From Mustelus asterias (Eukaryota), in NCBI RefSeq assembly GCF_964213995.1, contig NC_135804.1, forward strand, positions 67,828,001 to 67,892,000: a DNA stretch of 64,000 nt. The letters are read 5' to 3'. Made by a program: the position numbers and the translations under genes. Numbering within the stretch: position 1 is the stretch's first letter; each line of letters begins with the position of its first letter. The notes beneath the pieces were generated by a model, which saw nothing but the letters and a program-made list of their open reading frames with translations, was not told the origin of the DNA and made no database searches. Positions 1-64,000 of the stretch are shown here, piece by piece.

Positions 1-1230
1 CATCGAGTCATAGGGTCATAGAGGTTTACAGCATGGAAGGAGGCCCTTCTGCCCAACGTGTACATGCTGCCCTTTTTTAAAAATCCCTGAACTAATCCCA
101 ATTGCCTGCATTTGGCCCGTATCCCTCTATACCCATCTTACCCATGTAACTGTCTAAATGCTTTTCTAAAGTCAAAATTGTAACCCGCCTCTACAACTAA
201 CTCTGGCAGCTTGTTCCAGACATTCACCACCCTCTTTGTGAAAACATTGCCCCTCTTGACACTTTTGTATCTCTCCCCTCTCACCTTAAACCTATGCCCT
301 CTAGTTTTAGACTCCCCTATCTCTGGGAAAAGATATTGACTATCTAGCTGATGTGTGCCCCTCAATATTTTATAGACCTTCATAATATCACCCCTCAGCC
401 TTCTATGCTTCACGGAAAAAAGACTCAGTCTGTCCAGCCTCTCCTTATAACTCAAACCATCAAGTCCCGGTAGCATCCTAGTAAATCTATTCTGCACTCT
501 TTCGAGTTTAATAATATCCTTTCTGTAATAGGTGACCAGAACTGTACACAGTATTCCAAGTGTGGCCTTACCAATGTCTTGTACAACTTCAACAAGACGT
601 CCCAACTCCTGTATTCAATGTCCTGACCAATGAAACCAAGCATGCTGAATGCTTTCTTCACCACTCTGTCCACCTGTGACTTCACTTTCAAGGAGCTATG
701 AACATGTACCCCTATATCTCTTTGTTCTGTCACTCTCCCGAGCGCTGAGTAAGTCCTGCGCTGGTTCAATCTACCAAAATACATCACCTCGCTTTATCTA
801 AATTAAATTCCATCTGCCATTCGTCAGCACACAAGCCCAATTGTTCAAGATCCCGTTGCAATCGGAGATAACTTTCTTCACTGTCCACTATGCCACCAAT
901 CGTGGTGTCATCTGCAAAGTTACTAACCTCCTATATTCTGATCCAAATCACTAATATAAATGACAAATAACAGCGGACCCAGCACTGATCCCTGAGGCAC
1001 ACCGCTGGTCACAGGCCTCCAGTTTGAAAACCAAACCTCTACAACTACCTGTCAAAAATACCAATTTTGTATCCATTTGGATACCCCTCGCTGGATCACG
1101 TGAGAGTTAACCTTATGCAACAACCGACCATGCGGTACCTTGTCAAAGGCCTTGCGAAAGTCCATGTAGACAACATCAATTGCATTGCCCACATCTACCT
1201 TCTTGGTTCGCCATTCAAAAAACTCAATCA
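1..1230 (-). mobile_element. 5'-truncated CR1 LINE (RT C-terminal half plus 3' microsatellite tail); second copy at 60961-62190
   Basis: ORF fragments DVVYMDFRKAFDKVPH, LVRPHLEYCVQFWSP, LERVQNRFTRMLPG; (catagag)n tail. Confidence 0.92.
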
Positions 1231-1530
1231 TGTCATAGTGGACATGCCACATTTCGTTCACCTTCTGAGAATGGAGGGAGGATGTTGGGCTTTCTTATCT
1301 ATAGCATCGGTGTGGAAGCACCAGGACAGGTTGCTGGTGATCTGGACATATAGAAACTTGAAGCTCTCGATCATTTCCACTTCATCCGTGTTGATGGAGG
1401 CAGAGACATGTCTTCCTGAGGTAAATGATTATTTCCTTCACTTTGAGGAAGATTTTATTGTCATCCCACGAATCTGTCAAATTCTCTATCTCTTTCCTGT
1501 ATTCTGTCTCAGCATCGCTTGAGATCTAAT
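1231..1530 (-). mobile_element. Rex1/Babar-type LINE fragment (remainder of an element split by the CR1 insertion)
   Basis: Same family as 46110-47745; in copy B it continues 60475-60960 across the CR1. Confidence 0.7.
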
Positions 1531-2767
1531 CCATATGTGTGATCGCATTCTTTGTGCTGATGATACAGTTCCTTTCTGATATTTTGATGAAATAAAGGTT
1601 TGAATATGAGATATTTATGAAATTCATAAACCTGTTCCTCTGTGCTCACTCATTTTATGCAATTGCTTAATAAACAAAATTGTTTCGTGGGAGTTAGTCC
1701 GAGGTCACCAAATAAAATGTACCATTTACTGTGAGTACTGTTTTCGCCAGTGGAGATAGTAACGTAGGGACAAATGTTTCCAGCAGACGATTGGTCACGT
1801 TGAGACAACCAAACACACAAAAATTAATGCAGATGAAATCGAGAAGCTTATTGCCAATAATGAGCAATTGAACAAAAATGTGCTCAGTGTCGAGAAGCAA
1901 CTTCCATGCACAAAAGATCAATTTGCCAGTGAAAAGCTGGAATTGATATGAACAATTTCAAATGTGTCGCATCAATGATAATCTGGATGAAATAAATGCA
2001 ACAACAATAAATCTTCCGTTAAAATTAGATTAACTGCAATATCAAAAAATTCCAGAATGTGTTGTGCAACAAAATATTTGAACAGGGAAAATGAATGGCC
2101 AGTGAAGCATAAGAGGTGCTTAAAAATCAAGACTGATGGACGGTTTGAACTTCGTCGTGAGACGGTTAAGAAGATTTTTGAACTTTGATGCAATCCTGAA
2201 ATTATGGAAGATGATCTTATATACTTGAAGGATCGATGATCATGGATACTTATATACAGTTGCATGTTAGGCTGACACAGAGTGTGGAGCAGCCGGAATC
2301 CTACCAATGGTTGAGTTTACAAGAGACAATTTGAAACAAACATATCAGTTTCATTTTCATGGCGGGTGTTTTACATCCTGTTGCACTGGTCAAGTAGCAT
2401 AGCGGGGAGGGAAATTTAGCAGAAGACAAATTACTTGAAATGTGCGTGGTCTTCCACGATACGCCCAGGCCGTTTTGTCGAACGCAATCTGCATCGCACC
2501 CAATGTGCCCGATGTGAATTAAAATGTTTGTGACATCGTTACCATATCATTCGTGAATTCAGCATGGCCGGTTCCTCTTCCTGTACCTCCTGCCACCCAT
2601 CTCCCACCCCCACAGCGTGACGTAATGTCGGCATTATTTACACATGAGACAGAATTTTACGAAAAAAATTCTAAGTGCCAAGCTGGCGTGAAAATGGGAG
2701 AGTTTTATTTCCGTTTATTGGCCGAGGCCAAATCAATACCTTACAGACGTAGAGAAGTGGGCATCGT

Positions 2768-3275
2768 GGGCAACACGGTGGCATAGTGGTATGCACTGCT
2801 GCCTCACAGCGCCAGGGACCCGGGTTCATTTCCGATCTCGGGTTGTGTATGAGTGGAGGGTGCACATTCTCCCCGTGTCTGCGTGGTTTTCCTCCGGGTG
2901 CTCTGGTTTCCTTCCACAGTCCTAAGGTTTTACACCCTGTTGCACTGGTGAAGTAGCATAGTGGGGCGGGAAATGTTAGCAGAAGCCAAATAACGTGAAA
3001 TGTGCCTAGTCTTCCACGATACGCCCAGGCCATTTTGTCGAGCGCAATCTGCATCGCACCCAGAGTGTGCCCGATGTCATTTAAATTTTTGTGACATCGT
3101 TACAATGCCATTCACCGGTTAGGTCGATTGGCCACGCTAAACTGACCCTAGTGTCAGGGCATTCGTAGAGTAAATACGTGGGGTCACGGGAATAGGGCCT
3201 GGATGTGATTGTGGTCAGTGCAGACTCAATGGGCCGAATGGCCTCCTTCTGCCTGGAGGGATTTTATGGATTCTA
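2768..3275 (+). mobile_element. HE1-type tRNA-derived SINE interrupted by a ~185-bp insert (2927-3113)
   Basis: A/B-box head (ggtggcatagtgg ... gggttcatttcc), core gtgtctgcgtggttttcctccgggtgctctggtttcc, CR1-like tail. Confidence 0.85.
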
Positions 3276-3289
3276 AGAAGTTTTTAAAA

Positions 3290-5780
3290 AACTGCTAGGT
3301 CATTTCTCGCCACGATGTGAAGTGGGCGGGACCTCGCCAGGAAGCCTGCAGTTCAGATCGGAGCCACAACATGCACAGGCGTCAAAACTGGACGAAACGG
3401 AGAGCTGGCCAGATTGCTGGGGACGTTGGTCACGGAAAGGGACGGCAGAGCAGCCTGGGAGGCGGTGGCATTGGCTGTCAGTGCGAGGGCACTGACACAG
3501 ACAACCAGAAACTAGTACAGGAAGAAACTTAATTAGCTGCTCCATGCAGCAAGGGTGAGTATGATCATAGAAACCCGACAGTACAGAAAGAGGCCATTCG
3601 GCCCATCGAGTCTGCACCGACCACAATCCCACCCAGGCCCGACCCCCATATCCATACATATTTTACCCACTAATCCCTCTAACCTATGCATCTCAGGACA
3701 CGAAGGGGCAATTTTACCATGGCCAATCAACCTAACCCGCACATCTTTGGATTGTGGGAGGAAACCGGAGCACCCGGAGGAAACCCACGCAAACACGAGG
3801 AGAATGTGCAAACTCCACACTGACAGTGACCCAAGCCGGGAATCGAACCCAGGTCCCTGGAGCTGTGAAGCAGCAGTGCTAACTACTGTGCTACCGTGCC
3901 GCCCAGTGTTAAACCTGATGTAGCTTTTTCCCCTATGTTAACCCCAGATTCCCCAACCCCAAGCACCCGACATATGATTCCAGTCCCTGATGCCCTTGCA
4001 ACTCCCTCCGCCACCGAACACCAAACGGCTCACAGACCTTGCCCTCTGACACCCCTGACACCCTACAGACATCCTGACATCAGACTCAACATGGATCCTC
4101 CTGTCCCCACAGGAGAAGAACGCCAATAACCACCGGGAGAAGACTAAGGCAGGGGTGTCTGCCCAAAATCTGGGTCCTCACCCAATTTGAGGAGTGGCCA
4201 GTGGAGCCGATGGGAGAGGAGTGCAGACCATCGCTGATAGCCAAAATGGGCTGGAGCACCGACATGAGCACTTGCCAATCTTCCACTCTTGGAGATATCT
4301 CAAGCAAGTTGCATGCAGCTCAGAATCCTGTCCCACTCCTGCACTCAACCATGTGTCCTGGGTTGCAGGAAAGTACCCAGCCCGGCACATCTGGCATCAC
4401 CATCCGCCCCCCCCCCCCGCGCCCCCGCCCCCCCCCCCGACGCCCCACGCCCCTCCCCCACCCCCCACGCTTTGCTGCTCCCACCCATCCTCCCCACGAC
4501 AACTCGGAAGACAGCTGGGATGAAGGCGATGATGGGACCTCCTGTGTTGGCACAAGTCTCGTATCAGCTTTCACTTCGTATTCCCATCCCATCGACGATC
4601 ACACTGGTGTTTCAAGTTAATGGTAGGCATCTGGGTCACTCTCTGGGGGACAGCACACACCTGCTGACGTACATCGGATGGAGGAAGGAAATTCGGAGGC
4701 CGCTGGCACGTGGAACCCTGCCAGTGAGTGAGGACTCAGCTGACCCCAGGCAACATGTTGGGCCTCTGCGGACAGTTCTCCCGCAGCTGCTGGAGATGCA
4801 GCAGCAGAGACCAGGAATGTAGGAGGGGCTGACAGCAACACTGGGCCAACGAAGAGGCTGCTGGGAGGAGTCCCAAATCTTTCAGGTCCAGCTGCTATTG
4901 CTGATCTCATGTGGTTCCCAGGTCCAAAATGAAAGTGGGGTGTCAGCGGTGGAAAGCCTGGGGTAGGAAATGATCACTTGAGTGGCAGGGTCCAAGCGAT
5001 GGCTATGTCACAGCTGTCCACAGACGATTCCCAGAGGGCCACAGCTGAGTCACAGCAGGCCACAGCTAAGTCGGAGTGGGCCATACCTGAGGGCCTCAAC
5101 AAGCTTATCGAGATTCTGCAGCTGGTGGCTGAGAGGCTCGAGAGCTTGCAGGAGACCAGTGGGACAGCGCCGAGCCACAGCGGGCTATGGCAGCAGCCCT
5201 TGGGAATGTGGCCCACTCTTAGAAGGTCATGACTGAGGGAGTGCAGAGTATGGTCCAGTTTCAGAGGGCAGGTGCTGCTACCCTTGTCGGGTGCCCTCAG
5301 ACTCAGAGCGCCATCGCTGACCACTGAGCAGGAGGCCGAACGCAGGTGGGCCTCCAGAACTGGCAGGGCCCGGTGATGGTGGAGCTTCTGCAGTTCAGTG
5401 CAGAAGCACCAGCATCCCATTGAGTGACCCAGGGGCCCACAGGAACCCCGAAGGAGGAGGAAGGTCTGGGGCCCGTGTCGGGGCATTGCACCCCAGAGAT
5501 GCAGCTGTGACTATAGCTTCTGACTCCCTCCTTCCTGACACCTTCCTGACTATCTCAGGGGCATTGTGATGAACAAGATGACATGGATACGTTTGTGACA
5601 TCTGAAAGCCAGACGGGGTCCTCAATGTTCAGGCCCTCCAGAGGACGATTGCCAAAGGGCATCACAGAGCAGAGCACAGGGCAAGGTAGGCAGCTGCCCT
5701 CCTCCTCCTCTGGCGTACATCCTGGGGAGACACCGAGACACAGTGCTAGACCATGTAGAGTTAAGAAGCTATAACGTCAC
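3290..5780 (+). mobile_element. Decayed Harbinger/PIF transposon, Myb/SANT-like accessory ORF region
   Basis: Degenerate 'ELARLL...' N-terminus near 3400; GC-rich decayed coding sequence converging on the transposase remnant. Confidence 0.5.
3562..3904 (-). mobile_element. HE1-type SINE, full length
   Basis: Reverse complement of ggcggcacggtagcacagt...gggttcgattcccggcttgggtcactg... Confidence 0.9.
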
Positions 5781-6079
5781 CAAAATGGCATGGGTAAAGG
5801 ACCGCAACTGTGAAATTGAGGAATTAGGCACTGTAAAGTTTCACTTCCACTTATTATATATGAGCACTTAGTTTGAGGGCCCAGTTATTGACAGCAATAA
5901 ATGTTGCTGCCCCCACAGCTGTTTCTAAATTGTCTGTGATTAGCCTCCAATAGGGATGACCATACCCCGATCTTCACCAGAGGGACTATGCATGTTGATG
6001 TTCATGGAGGAGGGCCCTCAGTGCACCACATTTTGAAAATCAACGCATTCCAATCATCCACTGGCGACAGCATGTGGCA

Positions 6080-6333
6080 GAAAGAAGTCTCACAAAACCA
6101 GGTTAAAGTCCAACAGGTTTATTTGGGAGCAAACACCACTAGCTTTCGGAGAGCTGCTCCTTCGTCAGGTGAGAGGGAGTTCTGTTCACAAACAGGGGAA
6201 ATAAAGACACAAACTCAATTTACAGAATAATGATTGTAATGCGAATCTTTACAGCTAATCAAGTCTTAAAGGTACAGACACTGTGAGTGGAGAGAGCATT
6301 AAGCACAGGTTAAAGAGATGTGCATTGTCTCCA
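6080..6333 (-). mobile_element. Penelope-like element terminal fragment flanked by a 14-bp direct repeat
   Basis: gacagcatgtggca at 6066-6079 and 6334-6347; contains a hammerhead core and AATAAA on the minus strand. Confidence 0.75.
6137..6171 (-). ncRNA. Minimal type-I hammerhead ribozyme motif
   Basis: Minus strand reads cac CTGACGA aggagcagctctcc GAAA gc TA gtg: conserved core, ggag/ctcc stem II, cac/gtg stem I, CUA cleavage triplet. Confidence 0.7.
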
Positions 6334-6699
6334 GACAGCATGTGGCAAGCAGGGCACCGACTCACAACATCTCCAATGACGTCCCCAGAATCAAGGAGAC
6401 ATACTCCCATGCCACCCTTGCATGCCACAAGGTCCTGCATTGGTATTTATTCTCCCTTATCCCCACCCTGTTCTGGACCCAGGTGCGAGCGGGCATGCAG
6501 AGCTCAGATAAGAGTCACACCTGTTTGCACAATAGCAGCGTCACATAGTGTCACATAACGAGTCTTGATCACCCTCCTGTCTGCCACAGAAACATGCCAA
6601 CAGAGCTTATAGAGGCCCACCACTCTGGTGTAAATTTGGCGCAGGGTTGACTCGGGGTACACAACGGGGGGCAGGTGGAATGCAGCAGCAGCAACACAG

Positions 6700-7950
6700 G
6701 CCCCCTAGTTGGCGAAGCTCGTGTTGCTGAGGGCCTCCCTAGCTGCCCTTACATGCCAGATTCTTGCTGCTGCCAACCATCCAGCACCTGGGTGGTTGTG
6801 GTTGTGGTGGTGGTGGTCATCGTCACCTTCCACTTCCTCCACATCCTCCTGGGTAGCCTCCTCCCCACCTCCCCAGCATTGTCCATCTGGTTGTGCTTGA
6901 CATCCTCGTCCTCAAGGGAGTTTCCCCGTTCATGTGACAAGTTGTGCAGGGCACAGCAGACCACCAAAATATTGGACACTGTCAGGGATCTATACTTTCA
7001 GGGCATTGCCAGAGTAGATACCTGATCAGCATTTTCAGGAGCCCTATGTGCTGCTCCATGATAGACGACATGGCAGCATGGCCGTTATTGCATTGGGTGT
7101 CCGCCTAGGTCTCAGACCTCCACACAGGCATCACCACCGAAGCCTGAATTGTGTCCCCCATGTCTCCCACCAGCCATCCCTGAACCCTGGGTTCCTCCCC
7201 AAAGCCCCTGGCATATCAGGGCTTCCCAAAGTGAAACTACTGTGCATGCTTTCAGGATGTCTGGCACAAATGTGCATGACGCATAGCTCATGGTCGCACA
7301 CCAACTGCACATTGATGGATTTTCCTGTTAGTGAAGTGGGCTGAGTTCTTCTCAGGGACCTCATGGTGCTATGTAAGCACTCGAAAGCCCCCTGCACGTT
7401 CTATATCCCCACAATGGCAGCAAATCCTACAGCCTGGGATTCTTGCTGATCCTGTCCCACACCAAATTTACTGTACTGGGCTGTCAGAAATACATCGCAT
7501 CTGTGACTTCGTGTACACATTTGTGGACAGAGGACTGGGAGATGCCACAAAATTTCCTGCTGGCTGTCTGGAAGGATGCAGTTGCATAGACATTTCGGTC
7601 TGCCATCACCTTTATAACCACCGGTAGTAGGTGCTCCCCTGTGCTCAGTGGTAACAAATCCTTCAGTAAATGTCACAGGTGGCACACTGTCCCTTCTGTT
7701 GGCAAAGATGTCACAGGATGCGACATCCGAGAGTTGTTAAAAAGGCACTCGCATCCTGAACTGCCAGGGTCTCAGTTCCGTTATTCTGTTGCCCTTCTCC
7801 TCCTGGACTGTCAGCCAACCTCCTGCCTCCGATGGGCATCTCCGTCTCCTGCAGCAGCTAGTGGCATTGGCTGGCCGTGTTATGCCTGCAGTTCATGCTA
7901 TTTTTCCTCCACTGCTCCAGCAACCACTAAAATGCGTGCAGCGTCTGTAA
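6700..7950 (-). mobile_element. Harbinger/PIF (HARBI1-like) DDE transposase remnant
   Basis: SINVQLVCDHELCVMHICARHPESMHSSFTL and SNILVVCCALHNL; frameshifted. Confidence 0.85.
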
Positions 7951-7994
7951 GTTGCATCTCTAATGAAATTAATAATCTGGTGGAGTGGTGCGGT

Positions 7995-8780
7995 GGCTTG
8001 TGGAAGATCTAATACAGATAGGACATATACAGTAAATGGCAGAACCCTTAAGAGTATTGAAAGGCAGAGGGATCTGGGTATACAGGGACACAGGTCACTG
8101 AAAGTGGCAACACAGGTGGAGAAGGTAGTCAAGAAGGCATATGGCATGCTTGCCTTCACCGGCCAGTGCATTGAGACTTAAAATTGGCAAGTCATGTTGC
8201 AGCTTTACAGAACCCTAGTTAGGTTGCACTTGGAATATAGTGTTCAATTCTGGTCAGCACACTACCAGAAAGATGTGGAGACTTTGGAGTGGTACAGAAA
8301 AGATTTACCAGGGTGTATCCTGGTATGGAGGGCATTAGCTATGAGGAGAGATTGAAGAAGCGTGGTTTGTTGTCACTGGAACGACGGACGTTGAAGGGCG
8401 ACCTGATAGAAGTCTACAATTTTATGAGGGTCATGGACAGAGTGGATAGTCAGAAGCCTTTTCCCAGGGTGGAAGAATCAATTACTAGGGGGCATCGGTT
8501 TACGGTGCGAGGGGCAAGGTTTAAAGGAGATGTACCAGGCACGTTATTTCCACAGAGGGTGATGGGTGCCTGGAACTCGTTGCCAGGGGAGGTAGTGGAA
8601 GCAGATACGACAGTGAGTTTTCAAGTGCGGCTGGACAAATACATGAATAGGATGGAAATAAAGGGATATGGTCCATCGAAGGGTAGGAGGTTTTAGTTCA
8701 TTCGGTCAGCATGGTCGGTGCAGGTTTGGAGGGCCAACGGCCCTGTTCCTGTACTGTAATTTTCTTTGTTCTATGTTCCT
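7995..8780 (+). mobile_element. CR1 LINE 3' fragment inserted into Harbinger sequence
   Basis: QVEKVVKKAYGMLAF, VQKRFTRV.PGMEGISYEERL; ttctttgttctatgttc tail. Confidence 0.9.
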
Positions 8781-9299
8781 TCTTTAGGGGAACGGGAGAG
8801 AGCGATGGATATGCAATAGACCTCTGGCCTCCCCAAACAAGTCACACAAACCCTCCACTCACCACCCCAAATCACAGACCAGCCACACACATTCCACACT
8901 GATCTTCAACACCCAAACAAGACGCACACAATCCCCACCGTCAACCCACCTCCGAGGCAAGCCACACGCACACACACACATAGAACCCCTGGAGTAGTGA
9001 CCCGAGTCATGACTGTTTTACAAGACCCGAGGATGCAGCGAAGCCCGTTAGGATGCTTTTCCCCATCTTCACATCAGCTTGCTTGCTGCCTCTAGTGCCA
9101 GGACCAAGTGTCAGCACTGTGATACGAGTTCAGCGCTAACATCTGAGTCAGCTGTGAGATCCTGCGGTCCGATCCCATAGCCAACAATACACATGCAGTA
9201 CCCTCCCCCCGCCACCCGAAAAGCAACGTGGCCGCCACTAATCAACCACCACTCTGCAACACGGAGCCCTGTGGACCTACTGCCTGACCGCACTTCGAT

Positions 9300-10200
9300 A
9301 CTGTTGCAAACTTTGTTCTAACAGGCTAAATGTTTTATTCCCCGATTGCAGTTGCCACGAATGAGGTCGTTAAGGCAAGTAAAACCGGTCAATGACATTG
9401 AGATGAATGCAAAATTTTTAAAAAATGACGTCTCACCCGTTTTGTGCGAGTTCCCGATAATGGTCACTTTTTCGCTGGAATGTTGGGAACGGCGCGAAAA
9501 CGGGCGCCATTCGCATTCGTTGAATCAGTACCGATGTTACGAAATCAACTCGCAGAAATTCGGGCCGGATGAAATCGGTAATGCCGCGGTCTCTATGTCT
9601 GAGACAGGTGCAGCAGTAGCGAACCGTAGCGTGGAGGTAAGACTCATGGGCCACGCCCGCTTTCTCAACTCTCGTGATGTTACCTACAAAAGATTCTCGG
9701 CGTGATCAACCTCCCACCCATTTCCGGCAACTGGCTCAATATTTTTGTTAATTTTATTAAGATGCTTAATTCCATATGATTAGTGAGCCGGGAGAGGTTC
9801 TCTGCGGCATGGAAAACACCTGCTGCCCATGAACGAGGAACACTGATGTTCCCCACGCCGGTATAAGCGGAGGCCACTGAGGTCCACCGGGAAGTCGAGG
9901 GCAAGTTCCAGCCTCTCAGTGTTAGCCTGGCACCTTGGCATTTCCCAGGGGCACGGGGAGGGGGGGGGGGGCTGGAGGGGGGGGGGTGCTGCCACAGACA
10001 GCCAGGTGGCATTGGCTGCCAGGCGTCTGGGCCGTCGCCAGTCTCGGATGCAATAATTGTCTCTCTCTGCTCTACAGCATCCAGCAGACTGGTTAGCTCG
10101 GCATCTGTAAGACATAGAACAGTCTTCCTTGGTGTCATCTTCGGGAAGTGACTGCCTGTCTGTCCATCCTTGGCGCTCATATAGAGCTGTCCCTACTTAA
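9300..10200 (-). mobile_element. Harbinger-type remnant with Myb/SANT-like ORF start
   Basis: MTPRKTVLCLTDAELTSLLDAVEQRETII resembles Harbinger accessory Myb/SANT N-termini; CpG-rich subterminal sequence. Confidence 0.6.
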
Positions 10201-10869
10201 AGTAGTTTTGACGAGCCATGCGCTCGTTCAGTCTATTTCAGCGATAATCATGTCAAGGCTGTTTGTTTTCAACAGGGGGGTGAGGCAAGAGCTACTCTGC
10301 AACGGAGCTGATGATGTTTACTCTGCAGAGGGGACGATCAGGTTGGGGGGCGGGGGGGGGAATTATGGGATGAACTCTACATGGGACGATATCCGGCGAG
10401 TAGGTTGATTCTGATGGGGTGTACTCTGCAAGCAGGGCTGACCAGTGAGGGGGTGTAATACTGATGTGGTGAACTCTGCAATGGCCTATGTCCGGGGTGG
10501 CTGAGGCTGTCGATGTGGGACGCAGAAGTTGGGGGGTCGTCCCGCCATTCCCATGGTGGGGAGGCCATGTCCGTGGGGCATAGGGCGTGCTGGATACATA
10601 AACAGGAGATCTCCTGGTATGTTGGGAGATCATACACATTCGCACTGATGTCCTGTGCGGTATTTCGCCGGCCTCTGTGGTGGGATTAGGCTGCGACCAT
10701 CCACTACTAGCATGAATCTCCTCGCGGCCTTTGTACTGCACGGAGCAGTAAATTATCAAAACTCAGATTGCTCAAAAAACCGATGAGGAAACCTGCCGTT
10801 TTCATTCCATTTCATTTAATAGTCATTGCAAAGTTCTAACTGTATTAGATAATTGATCAGGCATTTTCC

Positions 10870-12670: not shown

Positions 12671-12689
12671 CATGGCAAGATGGCGCACG

Positions 12690-16982: not shown

Positions 16983-16988
16983 TTTATT
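16983..16988 (-). terminator. Candidate polyadenylation signal AATAAA for the receptor gene
   Basis: TTTATT on the plus strand about 550 nt downstream of the stop codon. Confidence 0.4.
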
Positions 16989-42678: not shown

Positions 42679-42679
42679 T

Positions 42680-44935: not shown

Positions 44936-44949
44936 GAATTGATTGATGC

Positions 44950-49840: not shown

Positions 49841-49869
49841 TGGACCAGGCACAGATTGCTGAGGCACAA

Positions 49870-52134: not shown

Positions 52135-52400
52135 AGCACGGTGGCACAGTGGTTAGCACTGGGGCTGGGGTTCAATTCGGCCTGGGGTCACTGCCTGTGC
52201 AGAGTCGATTCATTCTCCCTATGGCTGCGTGGGTTTCCTCCGGTGCTCGGGTTTCCTCCCACTCTCCAAAGATATGGGCGGTACGTTGATTGGCCATGCG
52301 AGGTTGCCCCTTACTGTCGGCGGGATGGGGGGAGGGGGAGGGGCTAGCAAGGTAAATAATCGGGTTGCGGGAATGCAATGTAGGATTCTCGGATTCTACG
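52135..52400 (+). mobile_element. HE1-type SINE
   Basis: gcacggtggcacagtggttagcact...gtgggtttcctccggtgctcgggtttcctcccac. Confidence 0.85.
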
Positions 52401-53339: not shown

Positions 53340-56300
53340 GGGTATGTTTAAAAATTTGAGCTGTTTTGCTTGCTATTGGAGGAGATAGTTTCGGATAATG
53401 ATGTGGTTAAACAAGCCATCATAAGCGCCTATGGACTTGTGCCAGAGGCTTACAGATAGAATTTTAGAAATCTGAGCAAGAGACAAGGTCAAACATACGT
53501 AGCAATAGAAAAAAAATCAAACAAAGTAACATTTTCAGGTGGGTAGGAAAACTGAAGGTAACACAGAAGTATGACACTCATAGGGAAACGGATATCTTGG
53601 ATGAGTTCAAAAAATCACTTCCCGACGTAGTGATAACTCATGTGGAAGAACAGAGGGTAAAAACTGCGAGACTGGCACCAGAAATACCAAATGATTATCT
53701 GTTAGATGGTTAAACATGATTTGTGTTTCAAAATCTATTTCAATATGTGAGTGATAGAAACTGGGGAAAGAGAAATCATCAGGTCTCAACGGCAAAGTGT
53801 AATTCTTTGGAGACAGGAATGAGAATTTACCTCAGTTCAAATAGGGAATATGCGAAGGCGGGGTAGAGATAAAAAAGCCTCAGATGTTTTCATTGTGATA
53901 AAGTGGGAAAAACGATGTCACAGTGTTGGTGGCTTATTAAAAGCAGCAGGAAGATAGACTTGGCAAAATAGCCAGTGGTGTTTGGTTCAGAGTCAAAGGA
54001 AATAATGGTTAAGGATAAATTTGTGCACATCATATTTGCTGTCCAGTGATTGTCCGATCTCTTTCAATAGTTTCCTTGTCTGGATCAGGTTTACTCGTGT
54101 ACAAGGAGGACTAGGTGAAGACGTTAAAGTTTTCAGGATACACAAGAAAGTCTATCTTCGATAGTGAGACCTATATAGTTCAGAAGGGGTATTGCCAGAA
54201 AAGGTGGTAAAATGTGAAATTCATGGTGAAGGGTGTTCCATTATATGTCCAAGGTTGGAGAGTGCAGTCAAATAAATAAAGTGGTCGTAGGAGTAATAAA
54301 GAAATTAATCTTTTCTGGAATACAGTTTATCCTGTTTAAAGACATGGCTGGATCACAGGTGGGAGTGATGGATACTGCGTTTGAAACGCCAGTGCAAAAT
54401 GAGCTGTTGCAAGAAGCCATCATGGCATTTTTGCTGTCGGTGCAGTAACAAGATCAAAAAGCCACAGCTTGAGCCAGGAGGAGAAATCAAAGAGTAAAAA
54501 TAAGGAGATTGAGGTTCAGTTATCATAAACCATTGTTGACCAAGTGACTGAGAAGAAACAACAACAATGGGAGAATGAAACAAATATATTTAGGCCAGCA
54601 GAATTGGTCGAATGACAACGGAAGGATGCAGATGTAAAGTAGTTGTAACAGAAAGGATACCCAGAAGGAAAATCTGCGTGTATACCACAGTATTACATTA
54701 AAAATGACATCTTGATGAGGAACGGGAGAACTTTACACGTTCAAGTAGACGAAAAATGTGCAGACGTTCATCAAAATGTATTAGTGGTGGGTTATATAAA
54801 GGAGGTGTTGCAGATGGAGTACGAGGTTCCAGTCGGAGGTCATGTAGGAGTAAGAAAAACTTAAGCAACTGTACAGAAACGTTTTTCTTGGACTGGATTA
54901 CATGATGATGTAATAACATTTTGCCATACCCATGTCAGGTAATAAGAAAACCTCAAGCAGTAATCAAAGACGCACATTCAATAGACATTTCAACATTTGA
55001 GGAACATTTTACGGGTGTCCCAATTGATTGTGTGGGACTCCTTCCGAGACCGTGTATGTTGACTATGATCGGTATGTCTACTAATTTCCAGCGGCCACTC
55101 CATTAAACGATAACACAGCAAATATTGTTGCTGAGGAGAGTTACTGCTTTTGACCAGTTAGGGACTGCAGACAAAAGAAAAACAATCAAATCATTGGTCA
55201 AATTTTATGTCAAAGCTGTTCAGTGAAGTATGAATAGCTTTGGGGTAAAACAATTCCATAATCACGGGGAACGTTAGAAGGGTGGCATTGGACATTAAGG
55301 TCAATGTTGAGGGTGTATCGAAAGGATTACCCAGAAGTTGGGATAAAGAATTCCATTTGTAAATTTTGCAATTAGGGATGTAATTATTACATTTGAATAG
55401 TTTGTTGGTCATGATTTAATGAGAACCACTTAACTTTATCAAGCATACATTGGTGAGTCAGCGTTCTGAGACTGCGTTATTAGACTATGTGTCAAACATT
55501 AGGGAGAGATTAGCTATACTTGTTATGTTGGCCAGGCGCCATTTAAAAGTGGCACAGCAAGCGATCAACTTCTAAGCAGATACGAGATCAAAAAAATCAT
55601 AGCGTTGCTAGTGGAGGGAAAGAATAAGTTTTGTTAGCGCGGATAGGGAAACTCTTAAAAACAATGTTTAGTGGCTCTAATCAAATGAAAAGAAAATTGA
55701 GTGAGAGGAATTATTTGAAAATAATGCCAGAAAAAAGAACCATCACAGAGTATGTCATGTGAATATGATCAAGTGGCATTTTGTAATGAAGGAAAGCAGA
55801 AGCAGCATGTGTTGCTTGTTACAACTGGGATAGAAAAAACAAGTAAATATATTATGAATATGAAATTCCTCCAATTAAATTGGATGAGCAGGTAGATTTG
55901 ATTTGAATTGATGAGATTTATTATTGTCACATGTATTAACATACAGTGAAAAGTATTGTTTCTTGTGCGCTGTACAGACACAGCATACCGTTCATAGAGA
56001 AGGAAACGAGAGAGTGCAGAATATAGGGTTACAGTCATAGCGAGGGTATAGAGAAAGATCAACTGATGTAATAAAATGCAAGGTAAGTTCATTCAAAAGT
56101 CTGATAGCAGCAGGGAAGAAGCTGTTGTTCAGTCGGTTGGTACGTGACCTCAGACTTTTGCATCTTTTTCCTGATGGAAGAAGATGGAAGATAGAATGTC
56201 CTGGGTGCGTGGGGTCCTCAATTATGCTGGCTTTGCCAAGGCAGCGGCAAGTGTAGAGAGAGTCAATAGATGGGAGGCAGGTTTGCGTGATGGATTGGGC

Positions 56301-56775
56301 GACATTCACGACCTTCTGTAGTTCCTTGCAGTCTTGGGCAGAGCAGGAGCCATAGCAAGTTGTGATACAACCAGAAAGAGTGATTTCTATGGTGCATCTG
56401 TAAGAGAGTCGTAGCTGACATGGCTAGATTTCAGTAACTGGAGCAAATTGTTGAGGTACCTTCCGGAGTTATTAAAATCACATGGAGAAAAATGTGGGAA
56501 TAAGCAAGTAAATACTATGAATACTGCTCCAATTCAGCATTATCTGTGTTTATATAATCCTCTCAAATTCGCACAGGTTGAGAAAGATAAGTTGATGTTT
56601 ATTCATCTGAGAAGCAGCAAACAAAGGTCTCCATCAGCCATGTAAAACGAGTGAAGGTGGAGAATGAAACCCCGTGACAGGACAATGATGAGAATAAAGA
56701 AAGTGAACAGGTAGGGAGACAGGAGCAAGACAAGTTGACAGAATTGTAACCTGTTCCTGAATTTTTGAAATTGCA
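53340..56775 (+). mobile_element. Decayed Gypsy LTR-retrotransposon internal region (Gmr1-like gag, zinc knuckle, integrase), interrupted at 55895-56432
   Basis: DVVKQAIISAYGLVPEAYR at ~53400, CFHCDKVG....QCW at ~53885, FEEHFTGVPIDCVGLLP at ~54995. Confidence 0.8.
55895..56432 (-). mobile_element. Rex1/Babar 3' fragment nested in the Gypsy remnant
   Basis: DPTHPGHSIFHLLPSGKR.KSLRSRTNRL.NSFFPAAIRLLN. Confidence 0.85.
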
Positions 56776-59700
56776 AAGAACAAAGAACAATACAGCACAG
56801 GAACAGGCCCTTCGGCCCTCCAAGCCTGTGCCGCTCATGTGCCCACGAGAACATTCTTTTGTATCACTCTATTCCCAGTCTGTTCATGTGGCTATCTAGA
56901 TAAGTCTTAAACGATCCCAGCGTGTCCACCTCAATCACCTTGCTTGGCAGTGCATTCCAGGCCCCCACCACCCTCTCTGTAAAATACGTCCCCTGACCTC
57001 TGTGTTGAATCTTGCCCCCTTCACTTTGAACCCGTGACCCCTTGTGTTCGTCACCTCCGACCTGGGAAAAAGCTTCCCACTGTTCACCCTATCTATGCCC
57101 TTCATAATTTTATACACCTCTATTAGGTCGCCCCTCATCCTCCGTCTTTCCAGGGAGAACAACCCCAGTTTACCCAATCTCTCCTCATAGCTAAGATCCT
57201 CCATACCAGCCAACATCCTGGTAAACCTTTTCTGTACTCTCTTCAAAGCCTCCACGTCCTTCTGGTAGTGTGGCGACCAGAACTGGATGCAGTATTCCAA
57301 ATGTGGCCGAACCATCGTTCCATACCGCTGCAACATCATATGCCAACTTTTATATTCTATGCCCTGTCCAATAAATGCAAGCATGCCATATGCCTTCTTC
57401 ACCGCCCTCTCCACCTGTGCTGCCACCTTTAAGGAGCTGTGGACTTGTACACCCAGGTCCCTCTGTGTGTCTATATTCTTGATGGTTCTGCCATTTATTG
57501 TATAGCCCCTCCTTACATTAAATCTACCGAAATGCATCACTTTGCATTTATTTGGATTAAATTCCATCTGCCATTTCTCCACCCAATGTTCCAGCCTATC
57601 AATAGCCTGCTGTATTCTTTGAGAATGTTCATCACTATCTGCAACTTCAGCAATCTTCGTATTGTCCGCAAACTTACTGATCACACCAGTTACATCTTCC
57701 TCCAAATCATTTATATAGATCACAAAGAGCAGAGGTTCTAGTACAGAGCCCTGCGGAACACGACTAGTCACAGACCTCCAACCGGAAAAAGACCCCTCCA
57801 CTGCTACCCTCTGTCTTCTATGGCTAAGCCAGTTCTCCACCCATCGAGCTAGCTCACCTTTTATCCCCTGAGATTTAACCTTTTGCACCAGCCTGCCATG
57901 CGGGACCTTGTCAAACGCTTTACTGAAATCCACATAGACGACATCCACGGCCCTTCCCTCGTCAATCGTTCTTGTCACCTCCTCAAATAACTCAACCAAA
58001 TTTGTGAGGCATGACCTCCCTCGTACAAAACCATGCTGTCTCTCGCTAATGAGATTGTTCAGTTCTAAATGCTCATATATCCTATTTCTAAGAATCTTCT
58101 CCAACAACTTCCCTATCACAGACGTCAAGCTCACCAGCCTATAATTATCCGGGTTATCCTTCCTACCCTTCTTAAATAACGGGACCACATTTGTTATCCT
58201 CCAATCCTCTGGCACCTCACCTGTGTCCAGTGAAGAGACAAAGATTTCTGTTCGAGGCCCAGCAATTGCATCTCTCGCCTCCCTGAGGAGTCTAGGATAG
58301 AAGCCATCCAGCCCTGGGGATTTGTCTGCCTTAATGTTTCCTAAAAAACAAAACACTTCCTCCCTTGTAAGTGAGATTTTTTCTAACGGGTCAACACATC
58401 TCTCTGAGACAATACCAGTCAACATGCCCCTCTGCTTTGTGAATACTGATGCAAAGTATTCGTTTAGGATCTCACCTACTTCCTTTGGTTCTAAGCACAA
58501 TTCCCCTCCTGTGTCCCTGAGAGGTCCGATTTTTTCCCTAACAACCCTCTTGTTCCTAACGTTTGTATAAAATGCCTTAGGATTCTCCTTAATCCTGTCT
58601 GCCAAGGACATTTCGTGATCCCTTTTTGCCCTTCTAAATCCCTGTTTGAGTTATTTTCGACTTTCTCTGTATTCCTCCTGTGCTCCATCTGTTTTTAGCT
58701 GCCTGGACCTCATGTATGCCTCTTTTTTCTTTTTGATTAGACGCCCAATTTCACTGGTTATCCACGGCTCCCAAATCCTACCTTTGCTATCCTTCCTCTT
58801 TACAGGCACATGCCTGTCCTGCAGTCCTATCAACTGCTCCTTAAAAGACTCCCACATGCCAGATGTGGATTTACCCTCGAACAGCCTCTCCCAATCAACA
58901 GCCACCAAATCCTGCCTAATCCGGCTGTAGTTCGCCTTCCCCAATTCAGTACCTGTAGGACACCACTCATCTTTTCCCATTACTATCCTAAAGTTTACAG
59001 AATTGTGGTCACTATTTGCCACATGTTCCCCTACTGCAACTTTGATGACCTGAGCGGACTCATTCCCCAGTACTAGGTCCAGTATAGCCCCCTCTCTAGT
59101 TGGACTGTCAACATATTGTTCCAAAGAACTGTCCTGTACACAATTTATAAATGCTTCCCCATCCAGGCCCCCAGCCCTAAGCGATTTCCAGTCTATTTGA
59201 GGGAAATTAAAATCTCCCACTACAACAACCCTATTTTTTCTGCACCTGTCCAGAATCTCCTTACATATCCGTTCCTCATCTTCCCGTGGGCTGTTGGGAG
59301 GCCTGTGGTATACCCCCAGCATAGTGACTGCGCCCTTCCTGTTTCTGAGCTCCACCCACAGTGACCCGTTACCTGACCCTTCCATATTGTCCACCCTCTG
59401 TACCGCTGTAATATGATCCCGAACGAGCATTGCTACTCCCCCATCTCTCCTCGCCCCTCCTCCGTCTCATCTAAAACACTTATACCCCGGAATATGCAGC
59501 TGCCAGTCCTGTCCTTTTAACCAAGTCTCCGTCACTGCAACCACATCCAAGTTCTGCGCAAGCATTAAGACTCTAAGCCCTTCTGTCTTGCCCGTGACGC
59601 TCCTTGCATTGAAGCATATGCATTCCAGACTTCCAGGCCCACTCAGGTCATCATCCCCCAGAATGCCCTTCCTCTAAGATAGCCTTGTCTTGGCCCCAAC

Positions 59701-60380
59701 CTCGTCCCCAGCCTCTATGCTTATTGACCTATTGGTCTGATCCCCACCCCCCTGCCACATTAGTTTAATCCCATCCGAACCACACTCGCAAAACTCCCAG
59801 CTAGGATATTCGTACCCCTCCAGTTTACGTGCAACCTGTCCTTCTTGTACGGGTGCCATCCTCTCTTGAAGACTTCCCAGTGGTCCACGAATTCGAAACC
59901 CTCCCTCCTGCACCAGTCCCTTAGCCACGCGTTCAGCTGTGCAATCTCCCTGTTCTTAGCCTCACTGACTTGTGACACTGGGAGTAGTCCAGAGATCGCT
60001 ACCCTAGAGGCCCTGCTTTTTAGCCGAATACCCAACTCCCTGAATTGCTCTCGCAGGACCTCCCTGCTCTTTCTGCCTACGTCATTTGCACCAATGTGGA
60101 CAATGACGTCTGTCTGGTTACCCGCCTTCTTTAGGATGCTTCCTACCCGCTCAGTGACATCCAGGACCCCGGCATCAGGGAGGCAGACTACCATCCTGGA
60201 GTCTCGGTCACGCCCACAGAACCGCCTCTCTGTGCCTCTAACCATTTCATCCCCCACTACTATTGCTCTCCTCGTTCCCCTCTGTCCCTTCTGAGCCACA
60301 GGGCCCGATTCCGTGCCAGTGAACTGGTCACCGTGGCTTACCCCTGGAGGGTCATCCCCCACCCCGCCACAGTATCCAAA
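56775..60380 (-). mobile_element. Near-complete CR1 LINE: ORF1 SGNH-esterase domain (59760-60362) and ORF2 APE+RT (frameshifted; 58651-59430, 56935-58611)
   Basis: ORF1 IVVGDEMVR...HIGAND...DRLH; ORF2 GDFNFP, PQGSVLEPLLF, FADN. Confidence 0.95.
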
Positions 60381-60474
60381 ATGGTATACTTACCTAAATA
60401 TAAATAGCGGGGTTGTCAAAAACAGCTGACCAACTATGCGAAGGAAAATGCAGATCAGTCAACAATCATGTTTT

Positions 60475-60960
60475 TAAAAATTTATTAATGTCACGTGTAT
60501 TAGTATGCAGTGAAAAGTATTGTTTCTTGCATGCTATACAGGCAAAGCATACAGTACATGCAGAATAAAAGGAAGAGTGCAGAATGTCGTGTTTCAGCCA
60601 TAGCTAGATTGTAGAGAAGGATTAACTTACTACGAGGTAGGTCCATTCAAATGGCTGATGGCAAAAGGGAAGTAATTATTATTGATTGGTACATGACCTC
60701 AGACTTCTGTATCTTCTTCCCAACGGAATAAGGTATGTCTGAGTTTCACAGGGTCCTTGATTATGCTGACTGCTTTTCCGAGGAAGTGCTCAGTCTCGAC
60801 AGAGTCAATGGTTGGGAGGCTTGTTTGCTTGATGGATGGGGTGTCGTTCATGATACTTCGTACTTTCTTGCGGTCTTTGACAGAGAAGTAGCCATGCCAA
60901 GCTGTGGTACAGCCAGAAAAAAATGCTTTCTGTGGTGCACCTCTAAAGCTTGGTGAGTGT
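60475..60960 (-). mobile_element. Rex1/Babar 3' fragment, continued at 62191-62490 after the CR1 insertion
   Basis: Similar to 55895-56432; tgtcat occurs at both CR1 junctions. Confidence 0.8.
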
Positions 60961-63900
60961 CATCGAGTCATAGAGTCATAGAGGTTGACAGCATGGAAGG
61001 AGGCCCTTCTGCCCAACGTGTACATGCTGCCCTTTTTTAAAAATCCCTCAACTCATCCCAATTGCCTGCATTTGGCCCGTATCCCTCTATACCCATCTTA
61101 CCCATGTAACTGTCTAAATGCTTTTCTAAAGTCAAAATTGTAACCCGCCTCTACAACTAACTCTGGCAGCTTGTTCCAGACATTCACCACCCTCTTTGTG
61201 AAAACATTGCCCCTCTTGATACTTTTGTATCTCTCCCCTCTCGCCTTAAACCTATGCCCGCTAGTTTTAGACTCCCCTATCTCTGGGAAAAGATATTGAC
61301 TATCTAGCTGATGTGTGCCCCTCAATATTTTATAGACCTTCATAATATCACCCCTCAGCCTTCTGTGCTTCACGGAAAAAAGACTCAGTCTGTCCAGCCT
61401 CTCCTTATAACTCAAACCATCAAGTCCCGGTAGCATCCTAGTAAATCTATTCTGCACTCTTTCGAGTTTAATAATATCCTTTCTGTAAGAGGTGACCAGA
61501 ACTGTACACAGTATTCCAAGTGTGGCCTTACCAATGTCTTGTACAACTTCAACAAGACGTCCCAACTCCTGTATTCAATGTCCTGACCAATGAAACAAAG
61601 CATGCTGAATGCTTTCTTCACCACTCTGTCCACCTGTGACTTCACTTTCAAGGAGCTATGAACATGTACCCCTATATCTCTTTGTTCTGTCACTCTCCCT
61701 AGCACTGAGTAAGTCCTGCGCTGGTTCAATCTACCAAAATACATCACCTCGCTTTATCTAAATTAAATTCCATCTGCCATTCGTCAGCACACAAGCCCAA
61801 TTGTTCAAGATCCCGTTGCAATCGGAGATAACTTTCTTCACTGTCCACTATGCCACCAATCTTGGTGTCATCTGCAAATTTACTAATCTCCTATATTCTG
61901 ATCCAAATCACTAATATAAATGACAAATAACAGCGGACCCAGCACTGATCCCTGAGGCACACCGCTGGTCACAGGCCTCCAGTTTGAAAACCAAACCTCT
62001 ACAACCACCTGTCAAAAATACCAATTTTGTATCCATTTGGATACCCCTCGTTGGATCACGTGAGAGTTAACCTTATGCAACAACCGACCATGCGGTACCT
62101 TGTCAAAGGCCTTGCGAAAGTCCATGTAGACAACATCAATTGCATTGCCCACATCTACCTTCTTGGTTCGCCATTCAAAAAACTCAATCATGTCATAGTG
62201 GACATGCCACATTTCGTTCACCTTCTGAGAATGTAGGGAGGATGTTGGGCTTTCTTATCTATAGCATCGGCGTGGAAGCACCAGGACAGGTTGCTGGTGA
62301 TCTGGACATATAGAAACTTGAAGCTCTCGATCATTTCCACTTCATCCGTGTTGATGGAGGCAGAGACATGTCTTCCTGAGGTAAATGATTATTTCCTTCA
62401 CTTTGAGGAAGATTTTATTGTCATCCCACGAATCTGTCAAATTCTCTCTCTCTTTCCTGTATTCTGTCTCAGCATCGCTTGAGATCTAATCCATATGTGT
62501 GATCGCATTCTTTGTGCTGATGATACAATTCCTTTCTGATATTTTGATGAAATAAAGGTTTGAATATGAGATATTTATGAAATCCATAAACCTGTTCCTC
62601 TGTGCTCACTCATTTTATGCAATTGCTTAACAAACAAAATTGTTTCGTGGGAGTTAGTCCGAGGTCACCAAATGAAATGTACCATTTACTGTGAGTACTG
62701 TTTTCGCCAGTGGAGATAGTAACGTAGGGACAAATGTTTCCAGCAGACGATTGGTCACGTTGAGACAACCAAACACACAAAAATTAATGCAGATGAAATC
62801 GAGAAGCTTATTGCCAATAATGAGCAATTGAACAAAAATGTGCTCAGTGTCGAGAAGCAACTTCCATGCACAAAAGATCAATTTGCCAGTGAAAAGCTGG
62901 AATTGATATGAACAATTTCAAATGTGTCGCATCAATGATAATCTGGATGAAATAAATGCAACAACAATAAATCTTCCGTTAAAATTAGATTAACTGCAAT
63001 ATCAAAAAATTCCAGAATGTGTTGTGCAACAAAATATTTGAACAGGGAAAATGAATGGCCAGTGAAGCATAAGAGGTGCTTAAAAATCAAGACTGATGGA
63101 CGGTTTGAACTTCGTCGTGAGACGGTTAAGAAGATTTTTGAACTTTGATGCAATCCTGAAATTATGGAAGATGATCTTATATACTTGAAGGATCGATGAT
63201 CATGGATACTTATATACAGTTGCATGTTAGGCTGACACAGAGTGTGGAGCAGCCGGAATCCTACCAATGGTTGAGTTTACAAGAGACCATTTGAAACAAA
63301 CATATCAGTTTCATTTTCATGGCGGGTGTTTTACATCCTGTTGCACTGGTCAAGTAGCATAGCGGGGAGGGAAATTTAGCAGAAGACAAATTACTTGAAA
63401 TGTGCGTGGTCTTCCACGATACGCCCAGGCCGTTTTGTCGAACGCAATCTGCATCGCACCCAATGTGCCCGATGTGAATTAAAATGTTTGTGACATCGTT
63501 ACCATATCATTCGTGAATTCAGCATGGCCGGTTCCTCTTCCTGTACCTCCTGCCACCCATCTCCCACCCCCACAGCGTGACGTAATGTCGGCATTATTTA
63601 CACATGAGACAGAATTTTACGAAAGAAATTCTAAGTGCCAAGCTGGCGTGAAAATGGGAGAGTTTTATTTCCGTTTATTGGCCGAGGCCAAATCAATACC
63701 TTATAGACGTAGAGAAGTGGGCATCGTGGGCAACACGGTGGCAAAGTGGTATGCACTGCTGCCTCACAGCGCCAGGGACCCGGGTTCATTTCCGATCTCG
63801 GGTTGTGTATGAGTGGAGGGTGCACATTCTCCCCGTGTCTGCGTGGTTTTCCTCCGGGTGCTCTGGTTTCCTTCCACAGTCCTAAGGTTTTACACCCTGT

Positions 63901-64000
63901 TGCACTGGTGAAGTAGCATAGTGGGGCGGGAAATGTTAGCAGAAGCCAAATAACGTGAAATGTGCCTAGTCTTCCACGATACGCCCAGGCCATTTTGTCG
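60961..64000 (+). repeat. Copy B of the segmental/tandem duplication (matches 1-3040)
   Basis: As for copy A; ORF track pairs 138..605/61098..61565 and 1972..2307/62932..63267. Confidence 0.97.

What the first reader, a model, noticed from the sequence alone, without database searches (positions are those of the whole stretch)
1..64000. The window is one unit of a recent ~61-kb tandem duplication, implying an array of near-identical receptor genes
Seen: 1-3040 equals 60961-64000 at a constant 60,960-bp offset with no indels and ~28 substitutions. The match crosses CR1/Rex1/unique/SINE junctions, so it is not two independent TE insertions, and it runs to both window edges. The Rex1 element split by the CR1 is complete on both sides in copy B (60475-60960 plus 62191-62490), whereas only the right part is visible in copy A (1231-1530), which predicts the repeat extends left of base 1. 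Inference: a tandem array with one ITIM receptor per ~61-kb unit, i.e. a birth-and-death immune receptor cluster that may be copy-number variable and may include activating paralogs.
Basis: partly seen in the sequence, partly recalled or inferred. Interest (0 to 1): 0.85.

Follow-up and report, generated by a model that had tools for sequence, protein, structure and literature searches.

The report
Large direct duplication around shark receptor gene
The two ends of this shark-like genome window are 99% identical copies about 61 kb apart, most likely successive units of a tandem duplication that each carry one inhibitory immune receptor gene, which is an ordinary way for such gene families to grow.

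Summary
Bases 1-3040 equal 60961-64000 at a constant offset of 60,960, with 28 of 3,040 positions different and no indel. No other self-match in the window exceeds 92.2% identity. The match runs colinearly through a 1,230-bp CR1-like piece nested in another LINE, through sequence unique in the window, and through SINE-like copies. It is therefore a segmental duplication, not parallel transposon insertions.

The window shows only 3,040 bases of the diagonal, cut by both edges. The copy length, and whether the gene is included, cannot be read from it.

The unit holds one intact seven-exon V / C1 / TM / ITIM receptor gene on the minus strand at 17541-27855. It belongs to an elasmobranch family that NCBI names "SIRP-alpha-like".

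The scan found this before on other DNA: two unchecked notes on the overlapping upstream window report a ~61-kb tandem unit and a like receptor about 61.0-61.1 kb upstream.

Array size, copy-number variation and activating paralogs stay untested.

Verdict: a real duplication, probably tandem, and ordinary in kind.

The parts
1..3040 (.). Copy A of the duplicated stretch (visible part; cut by the window start)
   Evidence: equals 60961-64000 with 28 of 3,040 differences and no indel.
60961..64000 (.). Copy B of the duplicated stretch (visible part; cut by the window end)
1..60960 (.). One period of the repeat (putative tandem unit, 60,960 bases)
   Evidence: The offset of the match is. That the whole period is repeated is inferred, with leads from scan notes.
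1..1230 (-). 5'-truncated CR1-like LINE piece nested in another LINE (same piece at 60961-62190)
   Evidence: Minus-strand reverse-transcriptase-like ORFs. Weak RVT_1 hit on 1055-1294. 1060-1230 is 84% identical to 49936-50104. One search shows that it interrupts the other LINE.
1231..1530 (-).
   Evidence: 1283-1526 aligns to 47182-46952 at 68%, and tblastx carries the match to 1232 against 47233.
60484..60960 (-). Left part of the split LINE, visible only beside copy B
   Evidence: aligns to 47724-47232 (73%), next to the partner of the right part.
17541..27855 (-). Receptor gene with seven coding exons: 27855-27801 leader, 27447-27151 V, 23214-22912 C1, 21730-21623 TM, 21175-21132 juxtamembrane, 17920-17810 and 17669-17541 tail. 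Together 1,047 nt, or 348 codons plus stop.
   Evidence: Exons and AG/GT sites were read, and the phases fit. C1-set scores 44.7 bits against a cut-off of 21. V is 45-57% and C1 52-67% identical to the 17 nearer family proteins. The juxtamembrane exon was found by local tblastn. The exons were never joined in a tool.
23784..26733 (+). CR1-like LINE inside the V-C1 intron
   Evidence: 84% inverted match to 59627-56774. ORFs of 274 and 400 aa that read as reverse transcriptase.
56774..60400 (-). Nearly whole CR1-like LINE just left of copy B
   Evidence: ORFs of 209 aa (GDSL esterase-like), 271 aa (Exo_endo_phos) and 571 aa (RVT_1, 120 bits).

Best explanation
The window holds a little more than one period of a large direct duplication with a period of 60,960 bases. 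It is most likely a tandem array in which each unit carries one gene for an inhibitory V / C1 / TM / ITIM receptor. The ancestral segment already held its transposons, including a CR1-like piece nested in another LINE. It was then copied head to tail, most likely by unequal crossing-over between misaligned interspersed repeats or by a replication error. The copies have since drifted to 0.92% difference. The differences are uneven: 1.40% in 1-1714 against 0.30% in 1715-3040. This suggests later exchange between units, by unequal crossover or gene conversion. Shown: the 3,040-base identity, its colinear passage across transposon junctions, and one intact gene in this unit. Inferred: that the copy runs through the whole unit and the gene, the mechanism, and the exchange between units.
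For:: 3,040 bases at 99.08% with no indel, and the next best self-match is 84%; the match carries a nested insertion and its host element, so the copying came after both insertions. The match fills the whole visible diagonal. For a copy of length D laid at random against the window grid, the chance of that, given any overlap, is (D-3040)/(D+3040). That is 0.24 for 5 kb and 0.90 for 61 kb (my inference), which favours a long copy. No N lies between the copies; 24 of the 28 differences lie in 1-1714 (best split p=0.0018, permutation p about 0.012); one intact gene per unit. Leads only: note s1-893290 on the overlapping upstream window gives the same reading. Note s1-893194 places a like receptor of 10,219 letters ending 33,244 letters before this window. 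If that distance is measured to its end, the receptor lies 61,002-61,098 bases upstream of the gene here; relatives sit several to a chromosome in other sharks (4 of the 17 hits on one Heterodontus contig, 3 of 17 on one Stegostoma contig).
Against: Neither end of the copy is visible, so a copy that stops short of the gene at 17.5 kb is not excluded by anything I could run. The scan notes are unchecked AI readings, and how their distance is measured is my guess. The upstream note spans 61,959 letters, which may mean a period about 1 kb different there. No note lies after the window's end. Zero indels beside 28 substitutions, and a transition:transversion ratio of 15:13, are somewhat unusual for old paralogs.
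Confidence: 0.7

Rival explanations
1. It is a shorter direct segmental duplication (low-copy repeats of a few kb to some tens of kb) that flanks a single receptor gene. The gene itself is not duplicated. The repeats would only predispose the locus to deletion or duplication by recombination between them.
For: Only 3,040 bases of the diagonal are visible. Nothing run here shows the gene in a second copy. No note lies after the window's end.
Against: A short copy rarely fills the whole visible diagonal by chance (0.24 for 5 kb; my inference). Scan notes place a like receptor at the matching place one period upstream, and an upstream reader saw ~61-kb periodicity as well (both unchecked).
Confidence: 0.13
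2. It is an assembly artefact. Two haplotypes of one locus, or misplaced reads, were laid down one after the other, so the animal has one unit per chromosome.
For: No read depth or spanning read could be examined. There are no indels among the 28 differences. Immune loci are often highly heterozygous (general knowledge).
Against: No N or gap lies anywhere between the copies. False haplotype duplications usually sit at gaps or contig ends (general knowledge). The 0.92% difference is about 4.6 times the nucleotide diversity of 0.002 reported for one shark, Hemiscyllium ocellatum, which is another species (PMC10587355, passages seen). If the upstream notes hold, the start of the unit occurs three times, which two haplotypes cannot give (unchecked).
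Confidence: 0.12
3. The match is two independent insertions of the same transposon or composite element, or the two terminal repeats of one giant element.
For: Much of 1-3040 is transposon-derived.
Against: The match crosses a nested insertion, its host element, stretches unique in the window and SINE-like copies, all colinearly at 99.1%. Other copies of those families in the window are 68-90% alike. The 58 kb between the copies holds a host receptor gene and many unrelated LINEs.
Confidence: 0.03

Closest known systems
Tandemly duplicated Ig-like immune receptor clusters (primate KIR and LILR, chicken CHIR, teleost NITR)
   Same: An Ig-superfamily receptor with ITIM tail sits in a region that grows by copying whole gene-bearing units. 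In this family other species have short-tailed forms with a charged membrane residue. Comparator papers were seen only as search listings and abstracts (PMC7516082, PMC1458963, PMC2442602).
   Different: The unit here is long (61 kb, mostly LINEs) for one 10-kb gene. The ectodomain is V plus C1-set, not KIR/LILR-type domains. Array size, haplotype variation and paired activating members are not shown for this locus.
SIRP-alpha (PTPNS1) family
   Same: It has an N-terminal V-type domain, a C1-set domain, one membrane pass and a tail with several tyrosine motifs. Three fit the ITIM pattern as I recall it: LLYAAL, LTYVAL and LTYAAV. NCBI's automatic names for relatives are 'tyrosine-protein phosphatase non-receptor type substrate 1-like' and 'signal-regulatory protein beta-1-like'.
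   Different: There is one C1 exon, not two. SIRP chains are not among the best 60 solved-structure matches of either the V or the C1 exon; the V exon lies nearest I-set and B7-type domains. CD47 binding is untested.
Elasmobranch 'uncharacterized protein' P0012 (Heterodontus francisci, 357 aa) and its relatives
   Same: It has the same order of parts and nearly the same length (357 aa against 348 codons here). V is 54.7% identical, C1 59.0%, and both tail modules and the juxtamembrane exon are alignable.
   Different: No protein of the window's own species was found (best V identity 57%). The V domain here lacks the G-x-G J-like motif that the relatives show before the last strand (read).

Membership tests
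Tandem segmental duplication (array) | Direct repeat at a constant offset, far more alike than the repeat background | tested here: met
   3,040 bases, offset 60,960, 99.08%, no indel; the next best self-match is 84%.
Tandem segmental duplication (array) | Copy length equals the period (units abut without a spacer) | not testable with these tools
   The diagonal is cut by both window edges and the flanks could not be fetched. The only lead is note s1-893290.
Tandem segmental duplication (array) | Both copies exist in the animal (depth, spanning reads) | not tested
The runs are kept as contigs only.
Tandem segmental duplication (array) | The gene is present in each unit | tested here: inconclusive
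   There is one gene in this unit. The neighbouring unit is known only from the unchecked note s1-893194.
SIRP family | N-terminal V-set domain | tested here: inconclusive
   V-set scores 20.6 bits, below the cut-off of 26. Relatives carry PF07686 in the precomputed list.
SIRP family | Two membrane-proximal C1-set domains | tested here: not met
   There is one C1-set exon (44.7 bits). tblastn finds no second one in the window.
SIRP family | Cytoplasmic ITIM-type tyrosines | tested here: met
   Read: LLYAAL, LTYVAL and LTYAAV, plus TVYTE followed by T. The ITIM pattern itself is recalled.
SIRP family | Sequence nearest to SIRP among solved structures; binds CD47 | tested here: not met
   no SIRP chain among the best 60 for V or for C1. 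Binding is not testable here.
Paired activating/inhibitory receptor cluster (birth-and-death) | Both ITIM-tailed and charged-TM short-tailed members in the cluster | tested here: not met
   This window has one ITIM gene whose membrane stretch has no charged residue. Short-tailed Arg-TM forms are seen only in other species (P0155, P0157, P0018).
Paired activating/inhibitory receptor cluster (birth-and-death) | Copy number differs between individuals | not tested

The most novel reading that the evidence does not exclude
The locus is a multi-unit array (three or more 61-kb units) of almost identical inhibitory V-C1 receptor genes, kept alike by ongoing exchange between units. The uneven 1.4% against 0.3% divergence would be its trace. 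Such an array would probably vary in copy number between individuals. That would be a shark counterpart of KIR/LILR-type haplotype variation, built on a SIRP-like, antigen-receptor-like ectodomain.
Probability: 0.3. Interest if true: 0.5.

Novelty: new member of a known kind. Interest (0 to 1): 0.3.

Why it matters
If the tandem reading holds, this cartilaginous fish has a young, possibly still exchanging array of inhibitory V-C1 receptor genes. Such arrays are where immune receptor families gain and lose members. A shark example would help date that mode of evolution to the base of jawed vertebrates, and it would give near-identical paralogs for comparing change in the V, C1 and tail parts. 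In practice it warns annotators that reads and gene models in this region will map to more than one place. In kind it is what is expected of such loci.

Tried and rejected
Chance or transposon-only origin is rejected.

A giant element with terminal repeats is rejected, because a host gene and unrelated LINEs lie between the copies.

LINE-mediated transduction is rejected by reasoning. The CR1-like piece is 5'-truncated, and the shared flank 1231-3040 lies on its 5' side.

A second receptor gene or an activating partner in the window was sought by tblastn with the six exon ORFs. Only self hits came back, and the best non-self E-value was 0.27.

Rfam gave 0 matches at gathering score.

The search for homologous proteins with the 132-aa V ORF gave 11 candidates and none at E<=0.001. 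This says little, because full-length kin fall outside that search's length band.

The representative search with the 98-aa V exon gave 309 proteins at E<=0.001, of which the best 150 were listed. The top rows are giant multi-Ig proteins with many matched stretches. The useful rows were the single-stretch ones of about 300-400 aa.

A frame problem between the TM exon and the first tail exon was solved by finding a 44-nt juxtamembrane exon. I dropped my alternative, a longer TM exon ending at a weaker donor.

Literature searches found no paper describing this V-C1 ITIM family or its tandem units in cartilaginous fish. These were four keyword searches of an open-access library, not proof of absence. 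Supplements were not consulted.

Dating: 0.0092 differences per site, divided by twice 7e-10 per site per generation (Hemiscyllium ocellatum, 95% CI 1.4-14.1e-10; PMC10587355, abstract and passages), gives about 6.6 million generations. The range over that interval is about 3.3 to 33 million generations. This borrows another species' rate and ignores gene conversion, so 'recent' means younger than the transposon insertions and no more.

The scan-note look-ups by sequence and by five words gave nothing for this locus.
Full report
**The observation.** Window 1-3040 and 60961-64000, compared base by base without gaps, differ at 28 of 3,040 positions (99.08% identity). Of these, 15 are transitions and 13 transversions, and the window contains no N. 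A self-blast gave 57 off-diagonal pairs at E<=1e-10. The end-to-end match is a single ungapped 3,040-base alignment. The next best pair is an inverted 2,876-base LINE pair at 84.0%, and no other pair exceeds 92.2%. The match is real, sits at the stated coordinates, and is far above the window's repeat background. It begins at the first base and ends at the last base of the window. So only 64,000 minus 60,960 = 3,040 bases of this diagonal can be seen at all.

**What the duplicated stretch is made of.**
- Bases 1-1230 carry reverse-transcriptase-like ORFs on the minus strand (weak RVT_1 hit on 1055-1294). Bases 1060-1230 are 84% identical to 49936-50104.
60,484-60,960 aligns to 47,724-47,232, and 1,283-1,526 aligns to 47,182-46,952. 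tblastx carries the latter to 1,232 against 47,233.
- In the copy at 46,952-47,724 the two parts are contiguous. So one LINE is interrupted by exactly the 1,230-base CR1-like piece.
- Bases 1531-2367 and 2553-2766 have no other match in the window. Bases 2368-2552 and 2767-3040 are short interspersed repeats whose other copies are 81-90% alike.

A colinear 99.1% match across a nested insertion, its host element, unique sequence and SINE-like copies can only be a copy of the whole segment, made after those insertions.

**Pattern of the differences.**
- 6 of the 28 differences are at CpG.
- 24 lie in 1-1714 (1.40%) and 4 in 1715-3040 (0.30%). The best-split binomial p is 0.0018, and the permutation p allowing for the choice of split is about 0.012.
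- The change of density falls inside window-unique sequence, not at a transposon border.
- There is one weak tandem-repeat row in 1-3700 and no homopolymer of 8 or more in 1-3040. The lack of indels is therefore less striking than it first looks.

I read the unevenness as a hint of later exchange between copies, by unequal crossover or gene conversion. It is a hint only.

**The gene in the unit.** One receptor gene lies on the minus strand, with seven coding exons that have AG/GT borders and fitting phases:

| Exon | Coordinates |
|---|---|
| leader | 27855-27801 |
| V | 27447-27151 |
| C1 | 23214-22912 |
| TM | 21730-21623 |
| juxtamembrane | 21175-21132 |
| tail 1 | 17920-17810 |
| tail 2 | 17669-17541 |

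- Together these make 1,047 nt, or 348 codons and a stop.
- The C1 exon scores 44.7 bits on Pfam C1-set, against a cut-off of 21.
- The V exon gives only sub-threshold Ig and V-set hits.
- The membrane stretch has no charged residue.
- The tail reads LLYAAL, TVYTE followed by T, LTYVAL and LTYAAV. Three of these fit the ITIM pattern as I recall it.
- tblastn of the six exon ORFs known at that point against the window found only themselves. So there is one receptor gene per 61 kb, and the rest is mostly LINE sequence.

**The family.** The 98-aa V exon found 309 representatives at E<=0.001. The best single-domain ones are about 300-400 aa long, led by P0012 at 54%. P0012 is an 'uncharacterized protein' of Heterodontus francisci with the same order of parts. 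Searching with it gave 17 proteins at E<=1e-20 among 2,590 candidates, from 11 elasmobranch species. NCBI's automatic names include 'tyrosine-protein phosphatase non-receptor type substrate 1-like' and 'signal-regulatory protein beta-1-like'. Four of the 17 lie on one Heterodontus contig and three on one Stegostoma contig.

Our V exon is 45-57% and our C1 exon 52-67% identical to the 17 nearer proteins; four more distant ones give 37-41% and 33-40%. No protein of the window's own species is in the database. Some relatives (P0155, P0157, P0018) have a short tail and an Arg in the membrane stretch, so the family does have activating-type forms elsewhere. Against solved structures, the V exon is nearest I-set and B7-type domains and the C1 exon nearest antibody constant domains. 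SIRP is not among the best 60 in either search. With only one C1 domain, the gene works like a SIRP-alpha-type inhibitory receptor but fails a defining feature of that family.

**Does the copy cover the whole unit?** This is the crux, and the window cannot answer it.
- The run search found four holders (shares 0.74, 0.66, 0.45, 0.43). All are of one coded organism and one study, from three samples, and all are kept as Logan contigs only. The other 18 of the 22 runs hold 0.20 or less.
- My one read-laying run, on 1-6000, was meant to compare the 28 control sites with the stretch beyond 3040.

What remains is indirect.
1. The match fills the entire visible diagonal. For a copy of length D placed at random this has probability (D-3040)/(D+3040) given any overlap: 0.24 for 5 kb, 0.53 for 10 kb, 0.90 for 61 kb (my inference).
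2. The left half of the split LINE must once have adjoined base 1. The copy therefore very probably continues leftwards, unless its breakpoint happens to be the CR1 end.
3. No gap lies between the copies.
4. Two scan notes come from the overlapping upstream window, which shares only our 1-2000. Note s1-893290 reads that window as 'one ~61-kb unit of a recent tandem segmental duplication'. Note s1-893194 reports a V-C1 receptor with four inhibitory tyrosine motifs, 10,219 letters long, 33,244 letters before our start.

That is 61,002-61,098 bases upstream of the gene here (10,315 letters). An agreement to within 42-138 bases of the 60,960 prediction would be a roughly 0.5% coincidence otherwise. 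With copy B this would make three occurrences of the unit start. These notes are unchecked AI readings of DNA I could not see, and the way their distance is counted is my guess. I treat them as leads that raise the odds, not as a test. No note lies after the window's end. That may only mean that window was not read.

**Rivals.**
- A shorter flanking duplication that leaves the gene single remains possible (0.13).
- An assembly artefact with two haplotypes laid in tandem also remains possible (0.12). Against it stand the gap-free sequence, the 0.92% difference set against a nucleotide diversity of 0.002 in the one shark with such data (Hemiscyllium ocellatum, another species; PMC10587355, abstract and passages), and the possible third copy.
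- Independent transposon insertions are excluded for practical purposes.

**Age.** With that species' rate of 7e-10 per site per generation (95% CI 1.4-14.1e-10), 0.0092 differences per site would take about 6.6 million generations without gene conversion. 'Recent' is therefore relative: younger than every transposon in the stretch, but not necessarily young in years.

**Comparison and novelty.** Gene-bearing tandem units are the usual way Ig-like immune receptor families expand. Examples are KIR, LILR, chicken CHIR and teleost NITR, which I saw only as listings and abstracts. Four keyword searches found no paper on this V-C1 ITIM family or its units in cartilaginous fish. That is weak evidence that it is undescribed beyond automatic annotation. 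I file the finding as a new member of a known kind: a real, large, direct duplication, probably tandem, in a shark inhibitory-receptor locus. It is useful for annotation and as a lead for copy-number work, but not surprising. The scan had already reported the same tandem-unit reading on the overlapping upstream window.

Noticed in passing
window 1-3040 vs 60961-64000: The differences between the copies are uneven: 24 of 28 lie in 1-1714 (1.40%) and 4 in 1715-3040 (0.30%), with a permutation p of about 0.012. The switch lies in window-unique sequence. This may be a trace of exchange between units.
   Followed up: partly
window 21132-21175 (minus strand): A 44-nt juxtamembrane exon (reads G-AKKKSINTTQRTDE) is needed to keep the frame between the TM exon (phase 1) and the first ITIM exon (phase 0). 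It aligns to the same segment of P0012, P0151 and P0156.
   Followed up: yes
window 27151-27200 (minus strand): The V domain ends ...TIVNDIAVQVLIY and lacks the G-x-G J-like motif that the relatives show at this place (P0012 has GETTGVQLVVY and P0018 has GKGTGLQLLVY).
   Followed up: no
window 56774-60400 (minus) and 23784-26733 (plus): A nearly whole CR1-like LINE has esterase-like, endonuclease and reverse-transcriptase ORFs of 209, 271 and 571 aa. An 84% identical copy in the opposite orientation lies inside the receptor's V-C1 intron.
   Followed up: partly
window 40510-42603: This is a GC-rich (0.54) stretch of about 2.1 kb built as nested inverted repeats: 40510-40788 against 42603-42326 at 82%, and 41093-41346 against 41706-41444 at 74%. 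It has G-rich, Gly/Pro-rich ORFs on both strands. Its nature is unknown.
   Followed up: no
window 4000-6000: This is the highest G+C in the window (0.567), with proline-rich low-complexity ORFs. It could be a CpG island or a degraded element.
   Followed up: no
proteins P0155, P0157, P0018 (other elasmobranchs): These are short-tailed family members with an Arg inside the membrane stretch (for example VHLIYRSILGILVII). They are activating-type partners of the ITIM forms, but none lies in this window.
   Followed up: partly
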